In this document: positions 29,089 to 46,468 of the stretch, piece by piece
How positions within the stretch are numbered: position 1 is the first letter of the stretch
Layout of the letters: the number at the start of each line of letters is the position of its first letter
From: Podarcis tiliguerta
Lineage: Eukaryota
Assembly (NCBI GenBank): GCA_965153285.1
Contig: OZ229112.1
Direction: 5' to 3' (one strand)
Length of the DNA stretch: 64,000 nucleotides
The notes under the pieces: model-generated
The model's database searches: none
What the model was told of the DNA's origin: nothing
The model's input: only the letters and a program-made list of their open reading frames with translations
Position numbers and translations under genes: made by a program

Positions 29089-30471
29089 GGTCTAGAGTTT
29101 ACTAGTTCCACATTTTCCTAGAGGCATTGGGAGGGGAAAGTTATCTTCCTATATTTTTATTTTTATTTTTGCTTTTGATCAGCTAGCTCTTCATTAAGCC
29201 AGCAACTTAGAAAAAAATTCAGAGGAACATATCAGAGGAACAGATGAAAAGTGATGTGTGTATGCCCACATGCATAGCAGAAGAATGGAGTGATAGATGT
29301 GGAGCTATTAGACAGACAGTCTGCCATGCTCCTATCAGCCTTCTGGCAAAGTCTTGTCAGAAAGGCAAGAAGTTAATTTGTCATTTGTGGTGGTGGTGGT
29401 GGTATACACACACACACACACACACACCAAGATAAATATCAGAGAGAAACACAACACTCCTAGATAAGTTACAGGAACCAGAGCACGTTTCTGCTGGTTC
29501 ACATACTGGTCCAGCATGTTCACGCTAAATGCAGTGAAGTACTGAAGTGAGTCTTTTGTGGTCCCTTCACAATATGCTTTATGTTCAGCGTCATTTGTGC
29601 AAAAATCCCTATTAAGCCTACATCCTCGCCTACAAAAAGCACCTGCTTCCCCCACTCCACAGACTTCATAAACTAAATTTAAGCCATAGTTTTCACTCTG
29701 CCAAAAAAATGCTGTTCCTTGTCTTAATACATACAAATCAACTGTAAAGTTAGCATATCTTCATCACAAGTTACACTCAAACTGAGGGGCATTTTTACCA
29801 GTATAGCTACCTAGTGCTCAATGAAACAACATAAACGGCAAATGTACAGTGAATCATTTTCTGCCCAGAGCTAGTTTAAAGAACCTTTCTTTTGTGGACC
29901 TCCTAATAGTTGCCTGAGAGATTTAATTCTAATTCTTTCCCCTGAGACCTTGAAAAATAGCTGTGGGCGTGCAGAGTAATTTCTTGAGTAAATGCTGCTG
30001 AACATTTTGAGTAGTGGATTTTAATAATGCTGATTCACATTTTTGTGAGATGAATGAGAACCTAGAAGTTCTGAGGTAAAAGAATTTCCAGACAAGCTAA
30101 GAATGGAGATGATGTTTATCGTTACATCATTCATGACCCATTTAGAAACAAATTACGTTCACAACAAATTCTGCTGAAGTGTTTGGCCATGATCTAGAAC
30201 CACCATGAGTGTGCTGTGTGACCTACTCTGGTTACCAGGAGGGTGTCATCCCTGTGGTCCTGATCTAGATAGAGGCCCCCAATTTGCAGCCTTCAATTTG
30301 CAGTGGGGGGAAAGCTACTATCTTCTCATGTCAAGGCCCTAAATTATAGCAAACTTCATGATAAATTTTGTGTGTAGTTTGGCCCATTCTGCAGGTATAA
30401 TGCATATTTTAGACACACAACCTATTGGCAAAAGACATTATTTGCATGCAAGTCTGCTGTAATCTACTTAC

Positions 30472-30721
30472 TTATATTCATCACCAGGTCTCCAGTGGAA
30501 GGATAGTGTAACCTTTCCGCAAAGTCTCGGCAATACCACACGAGCAATTCCTGGCCAGGTGGTATGGGTTTGATAGTATAAAAGTAGACATCCATTCCAT
30601 TCTGACAAGCAGCCAAGTTCTGCTCCTGAACAGAATGTGCTGGGTTTACATAACGCATCCAATTGCTCTTTTCCTCATTAAATCCATCAATGAAGTGGAG
30701 AAGCTCACCACCAGAATATAT
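30472..30721 (-). CDS. PRDM1: PRDM1 exon 4, PR/SET domain ([28 protein letters not shown]...ELLVWY...VMNI)
   Basis: Lies within ORF 30464..30727. NWMRYVN and ELLVWY PR motifs; acceptor tctttgcag, donor A|gtaagt; 250 nt, ends in phase 1. Confidence 0.97.
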
Positions 30722-33700
30722 CTGCAAAGAATGGAAGATAGAAATGTAAGGTATAAATGGAAAAGAACCCTTTTTTAAAAAAAGGCAATGATATATACTA
30801 GTGGATGGTAAGTACCCTTTATAGAATGTAGGAGATCATCCAAATGGAATATGCTTTGTAACTTTTTTCTGATGCCATGTGTTATTTTGATGCTTAGCAT
30901 TCAAATGAAAGCATGCTACTTAAAAGTTCAGTATTCAGTGCCTCTGCTTTAAGACTCTTGGACTGCTGGTCAACAAGTGGGTGGTATTATTGACTTAAGG
31001 TCTGACTGTGTGCTTGCAATAATGTGGTGACTCACTTTTGTAAAGACTGATTAGCATGGTTATGTCACAACCAATTCCTTGCCCTTGTCTCTCCCCCCCC
31101 CCCCCTTATGGCCTCTTTACTTGCTGTTTCCTACCATCACCACCCAAAGCTTTAAGCTACGCAAATATCAACCACCCCAAAGTCCTAAAGTGACACTTGA
31201 GCATACTTGGAATGTAGCCCTTTTGTTAAAGGGCTGGTGGGGTAAAGTGAACTGTATTTCGTATATCTAACAGGAGATCTGGAAGCGGGCCAGATTGTGA
31301 CAGCAAGAGAAATATTTTTCTCTCTCAGCTGGTATGTTTGAGAAAATATGACTCTACAGCATGTGATGGAAGAACAAATAATGTACTGATTCGATATATC
31401 CTTGTTTTCCAGTGTGCATCTGAGAACATGAAAGTGAATATAGAAAATCCCTGACAAAGCTGTACCTGTAGACTGTAGTGTAGCCTTGCTTTCAGTTTAC
31501 CACTGAAACTATGGCACAGTTAACTATAGTTAACTGGTAACTATAAGGTTGTGAGGTTTTTTTTAAAAAAAGTTTCACAAGTCATCATGTTCAAAAAGGA
31601 AATATTTATTCCCCCCTCTTTCCTGCATTGTTCTAAAGGGCTCTGGGCCAGTGACAATATGCATCCCTGTTTCGTTTTACTTAAAAATAAAATCCCCATG
31701 AAGTTAGTGCCATAGATTAGTGTAATGGCTGGGATAGAATTTCAGTTTGGTTTTCCCATGTCCGAATGCAATGTTGCACCATTTCCCTGTGCTTTTTGAC
31801 ATGCACGTTCAATTTCTTCTGAATGCTGTTTGATGTAAGAATCGACTGAGAAGTCATTAAAAAAAAAGCAGCAACAAAAGCTGGCCTTTTAACACAGGCA
31901 GTAAACACCAGAATCACTTTCTTACTTCCTGTCATTTGAGGCTGAGGAAATACATGTGGCTTCATCAAAGAAGCTTGAGAGATTTTGCGGTGTTTTTGTT
32001 ATGAGAAAGATGGAACAAAGCCTGAAGAATTATGCACTCAAGAGGAGTTTGTTAGCTCCGATTTGCAAGCTTCCAGGAACTGAGTTCCATTGATGTACAC
32101 TTCTATTACAGATAGAAACTACTTTCCGAAGTTAGACCAAGTGACTTCCAGTCATCTTTCCAGAGCTAGTAGAATTTACTGTATTGCTTTCTTCAAAACA
32201 CACACATCTCACTGCAGTAAGATCGAATGGCCTCATAAAACTTTATTTTGCCACCTCACCAGATTTCCGTGTATCGTATGGAAGATTAAAAATGTGCTGA
32301 GTCATACTGTAGCAATTACAAGAAATGACATCACCCTGGAGTTTGCACAGCATATTCATGCCTTCTCTTTTTAGAGGGTATATTTTGAATGGAACATTTA
32401 TGCTTACATACAACAGATGTTCCTGTTCCTGCCAGCCAAATCAGGATGTCTTTTATATGACATGTGGGAAATTATCTTCCACAATTTCCTTTGCATGTGC
32501 AAGACTGTTTTCAGGCCCTTAGCAAAGAACCTTTTCTACTTGGAGAGTGCGTGAAGCAAAAGAATAAACAAAAGTAAATACCAAGACTTTTCAGAAGGCA
32601 CATAACACAAGCATGATGTTAGCTTCCTCAATGAAAGTCTGGAATAACATCCTGTTACATAGTCAGAATCCTCTTGTAAGATTTGTTTAATTACTTAAAT
32701 GTGCTAATGACTAGTCTGAAAGCATGCATGCTTCTAGGGTGAGGCCAAGATATTTTCCTGCCTGAGATGAAGGAAAAAATGGCACCCTACTCCATTCCAT
32801 GTACTGACGCATGGCATACAAAAGTCTATCCTTCAACACCTCACCACTGCTCTCTGCCCCTTAGCAACTGCCGCCTAAGGCTGCTGTCTTACTCTGTCTA
32901 ATGGTAGGGCCAGCTCTGCACTCTTCTTTAGTTCTCCTGATGTGAGCACTGAAAGGACTTGATGACAGATGCCAACTGGCATCTCCCAGTGCAGGAGATC
33001 CCTTAAAGTGTATTTTATTGAAAAAATACTAATAGTTAAGGAGAACAGAGAATCAAGTCACACTTGTTTCTATTGAATCATTAAGATGTAACAAAGGAAA
33101 ACATGGAAACATTGTTTAAACGGCCAGCTTTCAGAATGACATGTGATGTTGGAATGATCTGATACGTGGCAAACACTCAGATGCAACAAGACAGTTTCCT
33201 GCTGCTGCCACACAAAGGTTTAAGCTATGCAAATATCCCCCACCCTGAATCCTAAATTAAAACTTATTTATACTTGGAATGCAGCCCTTTTGTTGAAGGA
33301 TTGGGTTGGGTATAGTGGATTGAAGTTGGTATACTTTAGTAAGCCTCTAGAATGGAAGAAACCTGACAGCTTTGACATTAGACACTCGTGTCTTCGGTAA
33401 TTTTCTTCCTGCAGCCTTTTAAAAAAAGAATGATGTGTGTGTTGTTGTTGTTGTTGTTTTTAAAAGCTAAATTCTTTTTATAATATTTATTGCGCTAAGA
33501 AGTGACATCTTGCCTAAGGCATTACAGAGGCACATATCTGATATTTTAGCCCAAGGATGGGGAATGTCTGGCTTTCTGGATGTGTTTCCATTCTCACTCC
33601 CATCAGTCCTGGCATAGCCAGTGTTCATGGATGGTGAGAGTTGTAGTCCAACAACTTCTGAATTTTTAACCTTACAGCAATCCTATGAGTTAAGTTAGAT

Positions 33701-43897: not shown

Positions 43898-44080
43898 CTC
43901 TTTGCCATGTCCTGCATATTTGAAAATCAAGTTCCTTGGCAAGGAAGACTCAGCCTGGGTTACATTGCAGCCTTCTGTGCTGGGCTCCGTGGGGTGATCA
44001 TTTACAATGTAGGTACACTTGTCTTCAAATTCAGCCTCTGTCCATAGAGTCATGTCAGCATCCTTCATGTCCATTTTCAT
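43898..44080 (-). CDS. PRDM1: PRDM1 exon 2, coding part (start [30 protein letters not shown]...KYAGHGKE); full exon 43898-44147
   Basis: Translation matches the Blimp-1 N-terminus and start of the PR domain. Acceptor ttttcttttccag|GCT at 44147; donor GAG|gtaaga at 43898. ATG at 44080 has in-frame TGA stops upstream. Confidence 0.95.
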
Positions 44081-44116
44081 TATCAACTCTGGTCCTTTTC
44101 TTCACTGCTCTGGGAT

Positions 44117-45760
44117 TCACAATATACGAGCTACACAGTGTGGCAGCCTGGAAAAGAAAAGAAAATTTACTTCCCATTCCTTTCTCAGCACCTCTAGCAT
44201 TGTGACCTAAATGCTGTCTATTGGCAAATAGATGGCATTAGTGGGATAGCTGAGGACTGACACCATATACCCTATACCCTATAAATTGAGCTGCCTTCTT
44301 TGAAGGAATGCTTTCAAGAGCTGGGGCTGGTAAAAATAACAAAGTCACAAAAAGTAATAGGAAAAGCATGTCTGAGAACAGCACCTGTGCACACCTCTTT
44401 AGAACCTTCCCTCAGTATCTGAACAGTAGGGGTGGGGGGATGAATCTGCAGATTCAAGGCTTTGTGTGCAAAAGAGCCTGTGGAAAAGCTGCCTTGGAAA
44501 AGTGTCATAAACAAGGAAAGGAAAAGGAAGGAACTGCTGTCTGCGTCTGAATGGGCTAAAAATGGAAAGTGCACGTTGGACGAGCGGAACACAGGCTTGC
44601 CTTTTCCAAATGGGGAAGGCTGAACTTTCCCACCGGCTTCTAACACACAAACAACTTTCAAAAACAACGCTCCCCTCCCCTCTATTGACATCCTCTTATC
44701 CTCTGACACACAGACAGCTGAGGGAGACTGTATCCTACCAACATCAGTCTGAAAACAGCCAGTCTGAAATAACTAGAAATATCCACTTGGATCAGAAAGA
44801 GACAAAAATACAATAGTATTGTTTTCTGTGCCTTCCAACAGAATTAAATACAAAGTGCAAAATCTACCATCAATACAGGGATTGAACTGCATTAGATATG
44901 CTGTATGGCATTGGCTCACTATTTCAAACCTCAGCCATGTACTCTCTTTCCACAGGCAAGCCTCCCCTCTGCTTCAGTTTCCCATCTACAATATCAGGAA
45001 AAAAATTTTTTAGGGCTCCTATAATTGTTAGCACATACTATTTGTCTTCTACTCTCATTCAGAAAAGAACATATTTTAAAAGAGGCGGAGTAATAGTATT
45101 CTGTGGAAAAACTAAATATCTGAAGAACACACTTACAGAATTAAGTTTTACTTACCCATTAAAAAGATAATGTTAACACATCATTTTGTTTCCCCAGGTA
45201 TAAAGTTACTGGATTAAACTACAGCATTTTCCAAAACAAAGGCTTTAGGCTCCAGCATTGTACTGCTAATCCTACCAGAGATTTTCATTTGTATCTGAGT
45301 AAAGCAGGGTCATATTTCCAACTCAAAGAAGTGTTTTTCAGAAGATGAAGTGTTTGGAAGAACAAAGTTATCAACTTAATTCCACACTTCCTCACAGCAT
45401 TGAGCAGATTTAATAGTTCTTCATACGGTGCTTTTAGTGGGCTTGATGAGATCAAACCCTAGTACAATCTGAACAATACCTTTACCACTTTGTAGGCTAT
45501 GACAAGAGAACTAATACTGAAACTCAGTGAACCGGCAGTTGCCACTAGCAGTGAAAGAATTAATCATCATAAAAACAAAGGTCTCTCGAACTTAAAGAGA
45601 AAGTCTCCAAGGAGAACCTTAACAGGTTTGCCGTCTCCATTCAAAAGAGTGCTAAAATCATCTGTCTCCCGGACAGGGCTAGGAAGAAAATTTCTTACCA
45701 AGGTACAGTCCACAAATAATTCCAGCTGGCAGCGCAACGTTTCAGGTAAGTCTCACACAT
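44117..45760 (-). other. Spliced uORF2 (45760-45699 joined to 44147-44117): MCETYLKRCAASWNYLWTVPWLPHCVARIL*, 30 aa
   Basis: Read directly across the exon 1/2 junction. Starts 2 nt after the uORF1 stop and ends 36 nt before the main ATG. Confidence 0.7.
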
Positions 45761-45946
45761 ATCTACAGAGTAAACATTACTTCTTCCACTGGCCGGGTTC
45801 AAGTAATACCAATAGAGCTAGCTTCTTTTGCTTCTGCTTCTGCTTCTGGCTCTGTCTTTACTGTCAGACAGGTGCTGCTGCACTTACTGCTTCAACTTCT
45901 TTGAAACACTGGAGGGCTGAATGTTACGATACTTTCAGTCTGTGTT
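45699..45946 (-). other. PRDM1: PRDM1 exon 1 (5' leader; not in frame with the main ORF)
   Basis: Donor ACCTTG|gtaaga at 45699. The 5' end AACACAGAC...CAGCCCTCCAGTGTT resembles the mammalian mRNA start as recalled; TSS position is approximate. Confidence 0.8.
45763..45777 (-). other. uORF1 in PRDM1 leader: ATG TTT ACT CTG TAG (MFTL*)
   Basis: Read directly; first AUG of the predicted transcript. Confidence 0.75.
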
Positions 45947-46250
45947 AACCAAACAGACTCTTCCTTTCTCCTCCCTGTTTCAGGTTTCCTATTAGCCACT
46001 CATCTGATTTACTCACAGTCACGGCTGCCAAGAGCAGGGGGTGGGGCTATACCTGTAACTCACACAGGTATATCCAATGAAACTCTGATCCAGTCAGAAG
46101 GAATTTTTCCTTTCAGCAGATCACACCAATACAGTTTTTCCTGTTAACACGTATGCTTGCTAACATTCTACTGGCATCCAGCTTAACTCACATGCAAAAG
46201 GACAAACATTTGGTGGTGTAACACTAGAAACTATGACCTAGTGCTTAAAT
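45947..46250 (-). promoter_or_regulatory. PRDM1 proximal promoter (no obvious TATA box; GT/CACCC box, CCAAT, kB-like site)
   Basis: Immediately upstream of exon 1. GGGGTGGGGC at ~46038-46047, CCAAT at ~46074, GGAATTTTTCC at 46100-46110. Motif function is inferred. Confidence 0.55.
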
Positions 46251-46373
46251 CTGTTCATTTTAACTGGGCATTTTTCGAACAAACATGCTTACAATTTCCA
46301 AGAAAAAGTATTTACAACAATATTGTTCTCCAGGTTGCATATTTTCTTACAATTCTGAGTAGTTTTATATTTT

Positions 46374-46468
46374 ACAAGGTAATCTTACACATGTCTACTG
46401 AAAAGTAAGCCCCACTGAGTCCAGCAGGACTTGCTCCAAGGTAAGTGAATGTAAGATTTCAGCCTTAA
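46374..46468. repeat. Short (~95 bp) palindromic interspersed repeat; related copies at ~6115-6350 (interrupted by the hAT MITE) and 52690-52778
   Basis: aatcttacacatgtctact...aagtaagcccc...ggacttgctcc...gtaagtgaatgtaagatt self-complementary pattern recurring in the window. Confidence 0.6.

What the first reader, a model, noticed from the sequence alone, without database searches (positions are those of the whole stretch)
44080..45777. Tandem uORF cassette in the spliced PRDM1 leader: 4-codon uORF1, 2-nt gap, 30-codon uORF2; candidate conserved translational switch
Seen: the predicted leader has exactly two upstream AUGs. The sequence is ATG TTT ACT CTG TAG (45777-45763), then AT, then ATG (45760), which opens a 30-codon ORF crossing the exon 1/2 junction and stopping at 44119-44117, 36 nt before the main ATG. 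From memory (unverified), the human leader reads ATG TGG ACT GGG TAG AG ATG and its second ORF also stops after 30 codons, so lengths, spacer and stop position would be identical across amniotes. Established: short uORFs allow reinitiation only after some scanning distance, whereas long uORFs suppress it (ATF4/GCN4 logic). Inference: ribosomes that translate uORF1 would skip uORF2 and reinitiate at the main AUG 131 nt downstream, while leaky scanners would be captured by uORF2. Blimp-1 output would then depend on start-codon stringency and eIF2-alpha status, which is plausible for a plasma-cell/UPR-linked regulator. I do not know of this being described as a conserved system.
Basis: partly seen in the sequence, partly recalled or inferred. 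Interest (0 to 1): 0.85.

Follow-up and report, generated by a model that had tools for sequence, protein, structure and literature searches.

The report
Two upstream ORFs in lizard PRDM1 leader
The two small upstream reading frames in the 5' leader of a wall-lizard PRDM1 (Blimp-1) mRNA are real and transcribed, but the second is the out-of-frame shadow of a stretch that codes for an N-terminal protein extension in most other tetrapods, so they look like an ordinary translational damper and not a proven conserved stress switch.

Summary
Observation confirmed. On the minus strand there is a 4-codon uORF (45777-45763), then 2 nt, then an ATG at 45760. That ATG opens a 30-codon ORF across a 1551-nt GT..AG intron and stops at 44119-44117, 36 nt before the PRDM1 ATG (44080). 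Spliced RNA contigs from two studies carry exactly this junction, and one reaches 45989, so both uAUGs lie inside the mRNA.

Interpretation partly supported. The genome is a lacertid lizard (Podarcis). uAUG2 sits in the same register as an ATG annotated in rodents, camel and a bat. In those mammals it lies 20 nt upstream of, and out of frame with, the annotated start of a 36-residue N-terminal extension. That extension is annotated in tetrapods from frog and salamander to mammals, and similar in-frame extensions are annotated in sturgeon, bowfin and bichir. Coding constraint could therefore explain the apparent conservation of length and stop position.

In this lizard that start is ACG and one extra base breaks its frame. 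The 2-nt spacer does not fit ATF4/GCN4 geometry; the nearest analogue is the C/EBP-type uORF.

The remembered human sequence was not checked. The scan noted the same stretch once more on this genome (s1-830662), not on other DNA. No paper describing a PRDM1 uORF was found.

The parts
45699..45989 (-). Exon 1 of PRDM1 as far as RNA contigs show it (homologue of mammalian exon 1A); the 5' end is a minimum, as the TSS is not mapped
   Evidence: X1 contig covers 45698-45989, X8 45698-45901, X5 45726-45942; both reading frames are homologous to mammalian N-terminal annotations.
45763..45777 (-). uORF1: ATG TTT ACT CTG TAG (4 codons plus stop); context G at -3, T at +4
45761..45762 (-). 2-nt spacer (AT) between the uORF1 stop and uAUG2
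45699..45760 (-). uORF2, exon 1 part (frame a): 20 codons plus 2 nt; uAUG2 context G at -3, T at +4
45738..45740 (-). ACG at the position where mammals, salamanders, a frog and a python have the ATG (frame b) that starts the 36-residue N-terminal extension
45736..45736 (-). Difference from all four runs of the sister taxon (minus-strand T in the window, C in the reads). It changes uORF2 codon 9 from Cys to Arg and frame b from Leu to Ser.
   Evidence: table 3. Model P0310 has Ser here.
44148..45698 (-). Intron 1 (1551 nt, GT..AG)
   Evidence: table 5
44117..44147 (-). uORF2, exon 2 part: completes the junction codon, then 9 codons and TGA (44119-44117)
44081..44116 (-). 36-nt gap between the uORF2 stop and the main ATG. 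It contains a second in-frame stop (44104-44102) and the lineage-specific extra base within AGAG (44090-44087). That base makes the exon 2 leader 67 nt instead of 66 and breaks frame b.
44051..44080 (-). Main start: ATG 44080 (A at -3, A at +4), followed by three further in-frame ATGs (44074, 44068, 44053) in [10 protein letters not shown]
   Evidence: NCBI lacertid models start here

Best explanation
This is the 5' leader of the proximal-promoter (mammalian exon 1A type) PRDM1 transcript of a Podarcis wall lizard.

Shown: it is transcribed and spliced as predicted, and it carries two AUG-initiated upstream ORFs. Also shown: uAUG2 is the positional homologue of an ATG present in mammals. The stretch it reads is, in another frame, the region that in most tetrapods encodes a 36-residue N-terminal extension of PRDM1. 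In lacertids that extension is lost: its start is ACG and one extra base breaks its frame. The protein therefore starts at MKMDM, and the old dual-frame region is now pure leader.

Inferred: the two uORFs act as a constitutive damper on translation from this promoter's mRNAs. Ribosomes that translate the 4-codon uORF1 resume scanning without initiator tRNA. They cannot use uAUG2 2 nt away, and some reinitiate at the cluster of four in-frame AUGs 131 nt downstream, as in the C/EBP-type bypass. Ribosomes that leak past uAUG1 are partly captured by uORF2, whose 30 codons and 36-nt gap allow little reinitiation. Both uAUGs have the same middling context (G at -3, U at +4), so uORF1 protects little in net terms. 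The geometry gives no eIF2-alpha-sensing step.
For: Sequence and frames. Splice junction in RNA contigs of two studies, with exon 1 covered to 45989. AUG contexts and uAUG depletion. No special leader structure (z = 0.12) and no Rfam family. Lacertid identity: 99.4% amino-acid identity of the large exon to the Podarcis muralis/raffonei protein. Frame-a homology with rodents, camel and bat, and frame-b homology with marsupials, monotremes and a python (10 of 14 residues). Frames a and b of camel, hamster and Peromyscus can be encoded by one DNA only at an offset of 20 nt (0 of 300 shuffles), the same geometry as ATG 45760 and ACG 45740. Other squamate models end ...TKLI before MKMDM with 22 codons, while the window has 67 nt. 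NCBI lacertid models start at MKMDM. The C/EBP-beta uORF mechanism is described in PMC4552494 and ATF4 logic in PMC12804389.
Against: There is no translation data, so initiation at either uAUG is inferred from scanning rules only. The TSS is not mapped: a contig end at 45989 is not a cap site, heterogeneous starts could lie downstream of the uAUGs in some transcripts, and a third mini-ORF lies at 46003. uAUG2 has kept its register between lizard and mammals. The residue after the conserved Val varies only among residues whose codons can start with A, which keeps a possible TGA. Both points hint at constraint on frame a itself, which a pure 'shadow' reading does not predict. The Ensembl-type model P0310 reads frame b through to MKMDM in P. 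muralis. I cannot tell whether that reflects a real sequence difference or a frameshift correction in the model.
Confidence: 0.5

Rival explanations
1. One reading: a conserved tandem-uORF translational switch. uORF1 lets ribosomes skip uORF2, and Blimp-1 output depends on start-codon stringency and eIF2-alpha phosphorylation.
For: The cassette is real and transcribed. The uAUG2 register is shared with mammals. An a-frame stop at the same codon is possible in 96% of the leader peptides and nearly impossible earlier. uAUGs are depleted elsewhere in the leader.
Against: A 2-nt spacer gives no distance over which ternary-complex level could decide use of uORF2. uORF2 does not overlap the main ORF. 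With low ternary complex, ribosomes leaving uORF1 would be expected to overshoot the main AUG more often, the opposite of ATF4. Both uAUGs have equal contexts. Conservation is confounded by coding frame b. uORF1 conservation is untested. An alternative first exon bypasses the cassette. No literature support was found.
Confidence: 0.15
2. The uAUGs are effectively neutral leftovers of the ancestral dual-frame exon. They have little effect on PRDM1 output because of leaky scanning, heterogeneous start sites and alternative first exons.
For: Both uAUGs lack G at +4. Frame b has decayed in this lineage through ACG and a 1-nt insertion, showing relaxed constraint on the region. There is a nonsynonymous difference in uORF2 between sister taxa. 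In run X5 the contig with another first exon is deeper (12.6 against 3.4).
Against: A purine at -3 normally gives substantial initiation. Only 2 ATGs occur where 5.2 are expected. uAUG2 has kept its register since the lizard-mammal ancestor.
Confidence: 0.25
3. uORF2 encodes a functional Trp-rich micropeptide. This is the reading of the scan's other note on this stretch, s1-830662.
For: The frame-a peptide shares Met1, Leu6, Trp13, Trp17 and Pro20 with the rodent and camel peptides.
Against: Both Trp codons and the stop are the frame-shifted images of conserved frame-b pairs (Leu-Glu, Val-Gly/Asp, Val plus a codon starting with A). Identity is no higher in frame a (30-40%) than in frame b (43-71%). 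There is a Cys/Arg difference between sister taxa at codon 9. In rodents the same ATG is spliced into a different continuation.
Confidence: 0.05

Closest known systems
C/EBP-alpha and C/EBP-beta uORF (small uORF ending a few nt before the next AUG; Calkhoven-type isoform control, described in PMC4552494)
   Same: A very short uORF terminates immediately upstream of the next AUG. By the scanning and reinitiation rules, post-termination subunits should skip that AUG and reinitiate further downstream.
   Different: In C/EBP the skipped and the distal AUG both start functional protein isoforms in one open frame. Here the skipped AUG opens a 30-codon ORF closed by two stops, so only the amount of protein could change, not the isoform. 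Function and conservation of uORF1 are untested.
ATF4 / GCN4 delayed-reinitiation switch
   Same: A short 5' uORF is followed by a longer uORF upstream of a stress-linked transcription factor.
   Different: The spacer is 2 nt, not tens of nt. The second uORF ends 36 nt before the main AUG and is in frame with it, rather than overlapping it out of frame. No step of the geometry senses ternary-complex level.
Mammalian PRDM1 exon 1A leader with its annotated long isoform (36-residue extension starting MLD..) and the rodent ATG annotated 20 nt further upstream
   Same: It is the same exon, with the same register of uAUG2 and the same splice into the exon carrying MKMDM.
   Different: In the lizard the extension's ATG is ACG and its frame is broken by one extra base, so the stretch is non-coding. 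In mammals uORF2 would overlap an annotated start codon.
Mouse Prdm1 alternative promoters, exon 1A and exon 1B (Morgan et al. 2009, as cited in PMC4497732)
   Same: A second first exon joins the same acceptor in run X5, so the uORF cassette is specific to one promoter.
   Different: The lizard's alternative exon is not in the window, and its homology to mouse exon 1B is untested. The 2009 paper was not held, so its details were not read.

Membership tests
ATF4/GCN4-type delayed reinitiation | Short 5'-proximal uORF that permits resumed scanning | tested here: met
   uORF1 has 4 codons. This is a structural feature only; reinitiation was not measured.
ATF4/GCN4-type delayed reinitiation | Second uORF start far enough downstream that its use depends on the time needed to reacquire ternary complex | tested here: not met
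   The spacer is 2 nt (45762-45761).
ATF4/GCN4-type delayed reinitiation | Inhibitory uORF overlaps the main ORF out of frame (ATF4, ATF5) | tested here: not met
   uORF2 stops 36 nt upstream of the main ATG and is in the same frame as it.
ATF4/GCN4-type delayed reinitiation | Main ORF translation rises when eIF2-alpha is phosphorylated | not testable with these tools
   This needs reporters or ribosome profiling under stress.
C/EBP-type uORF bypass | Small uORF terminating a few nt before the next AUG | tested here: met
   TAG at 45765-45763 and ATG at 45760.
C/EBP-type uORF bypass | Skipped and distal AUGs start alternative protein isoforms in one open frame | tested here: not met
   Two stops lie between uAUG2 and the main ATG in the lizard. 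In mammals the neighbouring frame-b ATG does start a long isoform.
C/EBP-type uORF bypass | uORF conserved across vertebrates and required for use of the distal start | not testable with these tools
PRDM1 exon 1A leader | First exon spliced to the exon that carries MKMDM | tested here: met
   The joint 44146|45698 is in contigs of X1 and X8.
PRDM1 exon 1A leader | Sequence homology to the mammalian exon in the same register | tested here: met
   Frame a: 6-8 of 20 residues shared with rodents and camel, matched by at most 18 of 20000 shuffles. Frame b: 7 of 14 with marsupial and monotreme, 10 of 14 with python. The 20-nt offset of the two frames is shared.
Conserved-peptide uORF / micropeptide | Amino-acid conservation in the uORF frame beyond what nucleotide conservation or an overlapping frame explains | tested here: inconclusive
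   Identity is similar in both frames. The conserved Trp codons and the stop are images of conserved frame-b pairs. Sister taxa differ Cys/Arg at codon 9. DNA alignments would be needed to decide.

The most novel reading that the evidence does not exclude
Across tetrapods, PRDM1 exon 1A would be a dual-frame control region. A mini-uORF abuts a conserved 30-codon out-of-frame ORF (frame a). That ORF overlaps the start codon of the long, 36-residue-extended PRDM1 isoform and ends 36 nt before the MKMDM cluster. Together they would set how many ribosomes make the long isoform, the short isoform or nothing. The lizard, having lost the long isoform's start, would keep only the dosage-setting half of the device.
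Probability: 0.2. Interest if true: 0.6.

Novelty: new member of a known kind. Interest (0 to 1): 0.3.

Why it matters
Blimp-1 dosage decides plasma-cell, T-cell and germ-cell fates, and its control is studied almost entirely at the level of transcription. A leader-encoded brake specific to one promoter would add a translational layer. The overlap of an upstream ORF with the start of the long isoform in mammals would bear on which N-terminus Blimp-1 actually has. As it stands the lizard cassette is an ordinary uORF-bearing leader. Its value is as a natural experiment: the ancestral upstream start has been lost while the out-of-frame ATG and the mini-uORF remain.

Tried and rejected
No cross-species DNA alignment was made, and uORF1 and spacer conservation remain untested.

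2. I searched for more frame-a N-termini with Peromyscus residues 1-46. Only the query's own cluster came back. Cluster listings gave the extra rodent, camel and bat cases.

3. The alternative first exon seen in run X5 was searched for in the window and gave 0 matches, so it lies outside.

4. Leader RNA structure is no better than shuffles. The Rfam scan gave nothing above threshold, only one chance-level hit.

5. Literature: searches combining PRDM1 or Blimp-1 with uORF terms returned no paper on a PRDM1 uORF; the hits were PRDM15/16 or gene lists. Morgan 2009 was not held. The search for '856 amino acids' found nothing.

6. I did not scan metagenome contigs for vertebrate PRDM1. The chance of success was low, and such a scan would most likely store human-derived contigs, which are not to be saved.

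7. No human contig was fetched or compared.

8. The joined exon 1 plus exon 2 sequence was never sent to a search or built in a script. Each exon was handled by reference and the junction codon was read by eye.

9. One repeat finder failed on a strand argument and was not repeated because it was not needed.

Full report
**1. The sequence**

- uORF1 is ATG TTT ACT CTG TAG at 45777-45763, translated MFTL*.
- Two bases (AT) follow, then ATG at 45760.
- That ATG opens 20 codons plus two bases up to a GT donor; exon 1 ends at 45699.
- Exon 2 starts at 44147 after a pyrimidine tract and AG.
- The junction codon TG|G was read by eye. Nine further codons and TGA (44119-44117) follow, which makes 30 codons.
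- The main ATG is at 44080 and opens [13 protein letters not shown]..., the PRDM1 N-terminus.
- The gaps of 36 nt (uORF2 stop to main ATG) and 131 nt (uORF1 stop to main ATG) are correct.

I never joined the two exons for a search or in a script. Each exon was handled by reference.

**2. Is it in the mRNA?**

Yes. Thirty-five sampled words of exon 1 found spliced-looking contigs in small runs of a sister taxon. Laid on 44081-46400, the runs show the following.
- A 4965-nt contig of X1 and a 701-nt contig of X8, from different studies, both jump from 44146 to 45698. They skip 1551 nt with GT..AG ends on the minus strand.
- X1 runs on to 45989, 212 nt upstream of uAUG1.
- X5 covers 45726-45942.
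- The few stranded raw reads of X23 lie on exon 1 in the orientation expected for a minus-strand RNA.

The refuting condition 'TSS downstream of 45760' is therefore not met for the assembled transcripts. A contig end is not a cap site, however. A third mini-ORF (46003-45992) sits 14 nt beyond the contig end.

In X5 the deeper contig (depth 12.6 against 3.4) joins exon 2 to a different upstream exon. That exon is not in the window. The cassette therefore belongs to one of at least two promoters. This resembles the mouse exon 1A/1B arrangement cited in PMC4497732.

**3. Chance**

The 358-nt leader has 2 ATGs against 5.2 expected from dinucleotide shuffles (P = 0.044). That is ordinary uAUG depletion. 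A stop within four codons, and two ATGs 17 nt apart, are not unusual in themselves. The leader folds no better than shuffles (z = 0.12), and no Rfam family matches.

**4. Whose gene is it?**

The large exon found a full-length sturgeon PRDM1. That protein and a gecko protein then retrieved several hundred orthologues. The window's large exon is 99.4% identical to the Podarcis muralis/raffonei protein, so this is a lacertid lizard. Earlier notes on the genome agree.

**5.

The annotated N-termini of orthologues translate this leader in two frames.

Rodents, a camel and a bat have models that start MS[DE]..L.CWIF.WKNVWVRP. The lizard peptide MCETYLKRCAASWNYLWTVP shares 6-8 of 20 residues with the rodent and camel peptides in a fixed register, and at most 18 of 20000 shuffles do as well. 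It shares 4 of 15 with the shorter bat peptide (90 of 20000).

Frame b is the annotated start of the long isoform.
- Its exon 1 part has 14 residues: MLDICLEKRVGTTL in placentals, MLDF.LEKLVDTTL in marsupials and monotremes, MLDFCCEKRVETAW in the frog Ascaphus, MPDLCLDRLLDSTL in salamanders and MPGCQLEVFVDCTL in a python.
- Its exon 2 part usually has 22 residues and runs without a stop into MKMDM.
- Similar in-frame extensions, with different exon 1 peptides, are annotated in sturgeon, bowfin and bichir.
- The lizard's frame b reads TLRCQLELFVDCTL, which matches the python in 10 of 14 residues and marsupials in 7 of 14.

A codon-compatibility test shows that the frame-a and frame-b peptides of camel, hamster and Peromyscus can be written on one DNA only at an offset of 20 nt. 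None of 300 shuffled controls fitted. That is the geometry of the window, with ATG at 45760 and ACG at 45740-45738.

So uAUG2 is an old ATG that in mammals lies 20 nt upstream of, and out of frame with, an annotated start codon.

**6. What happened in the lizard**

- The frame-b ATG is ACG.
- The exon 2 leader is 67 nt, not 66. Other squamate models end ...TKLI before MKMDM. The window reads ACC AGA GTT GAT A ATG, with one extra base in AGAG at 44090-44087.
- Frame b is therefore dead here, and NCBI's lacertid models start at MKMDM.
- RNA contigs of the sister taxon match the 67-nt version exactly.
- An Ensembl-type P. muralis model (P0310) reads frame b through to MKMDM, with Ser-Thr where the window has Arg-Ala. 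I cannot tell a real difference from a model correction.
- The same model has Ser at the position of the only exon 1 difference seen in the reads (45736). In uORF2 that difference is Cys against Arg.

**7. Is uORF2's length conserved?**

This could be tested only indirectly. From 52 distinct 22-residue leader peptides, an a-frame stop is codon-compatible at positions 1-9 in 0-15% of them. At position 10 it is compatible in 96%: Val, Leu or Met followed by a residue whose codon can begin with A. The next compatible place is position 15.

The same Val is also simply a conserved residue of the long isoform, and both Trp codons of frame a are images of conserved Leu-Glu and Val-Gly/Asp pairs. Constraint on frame b therefore predicts most of what looked like uORF conservation.

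A weak hint of extra constraint remains. The residue after the Val varies (Arg, Lys, Asn, Ser, Thr) almost only among residues whose codons can start with A.

uORF1 and the 2-nt spacer leave no trace in any protein. The human letters quoted from memory were not checked.

**8. Mechanism**

By the scanning rules, which are established knowledge, both uAUGs have a purine at -3 and U at +4. They should capture a substantial and similar share of ribosomes.
- After the 4-codon uORF1, subunits resume scanning without initiator tRNA and cannot use an AUG 2 nt away.
- Within 131 nt some will be reloaded. They can then start at the main AUG or at one of the three further in-frame AUGs within the next 30 nt.
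- uORF2, with 30 codons and a 36-nt gap, should allow little reinitiation.

This resembles the C/EBP uORF described in PMC4552494 more than ATF4 (PMC12804389). With a 2-nt spacer the skip of uAUG2 does not depend on ternary-complex level. Low ternary complex would be expected to make ribosomes overshoot the main AUG.

Simple bookkeeping also limits the benefit of uORF1. With equal capture at both uAUGs, uORF1 raises main-ORF output only if reinitiation after it is more efficient than leaky scanning past uAUG2. The net effect is therefore likely a modest, constitutive brake. All of this is inference; nothing here measures translation.

**9. Literature**

Full-text searches found no paper on a PRDM1 or Blimp-1 uORF.

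**10. Verdict**

This is an undescribed but ordinary uORF-bearing leader, most like the C/EBP bypass in form. Its apparent deep conservation is largely explained by an overlapping ancestral coding frame that this lizard has lost. The more interesting and untested possibility concerns mammals, where the same out-of-frame ORF would overlap the start of the long isoform.

Noticed in passing
window 44147-44149 (acceptor of exon 2); the other exon lies outside the window: In run X5 a 4534-nt contig (depth 12.6) joins exon 2 to a different upstream exon (255 nt of loose end) that has no match in the window. It is therefore either more than 18 kb upstream of exon 1 or elsewhere. This suggests an alternative promoter like mouse exon 1B.
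   Followed up: partly
window 44590-44700 and 44352-44510 (intron 1, minus strand): A block of intron 1 translates to a peptide 53% identical over 34 residues (E = 1e-6) to the start of a predicted capuchin PRDM1 isoform. A 159-nt low-depth contig of X1 lies at 44352-44510. This may be a conserved intronic element or an alternative first exon or promoter shared by lizard and primates.
   Followed up: partly
window 45738-45740 and 44087-44090: Lacertids appear to have lost the ancestral 36-residue N-terminal extension of PRDM1. Its ATG is ACG and one extra base breaks the frame, whereas a python, a cordylid, an iguanian and a monitor keep an open 22-codon leader.
   Followed up: partly
window 45992-46003: A third mini-ORF (ATG AGT GGC TAA) lies 14 nt upstream of the farthest RNA contig end. 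Whether it is in the leader depends on the unmapped TSS. A CACCC/GC-rich box lies at about 46035-46050.
   Followed up: no
window 44051-44080: Four in-frame ATGs lie within 30 nt at the start of the main ORF ([10 protein letters not shown]). The MKMDM part is conserved in nearly all vertebrate orthologues seen. This could serve as a landing zone for late-reinitiating ribosomes.
   Followed up: no
window 30464-30727 (exon 4) and upstream intron: Turtle, tuatara and mammalian models start MEKIYS.. at this exon (the PRDM1-beta type, from an internal promoter). Zootoca has a model with a different upstream exon joined here. The window's equivalent reads ..[14 protein letters not shown]. The internal promoter was not examined.
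   Followed up: no
window 45660-45990: Runs of four other organisms hold 9-17% of the sampled 31-letter words of exon 1, so some stretches of this exon are letter-perfect in more distant relatives.
   Followed up: no
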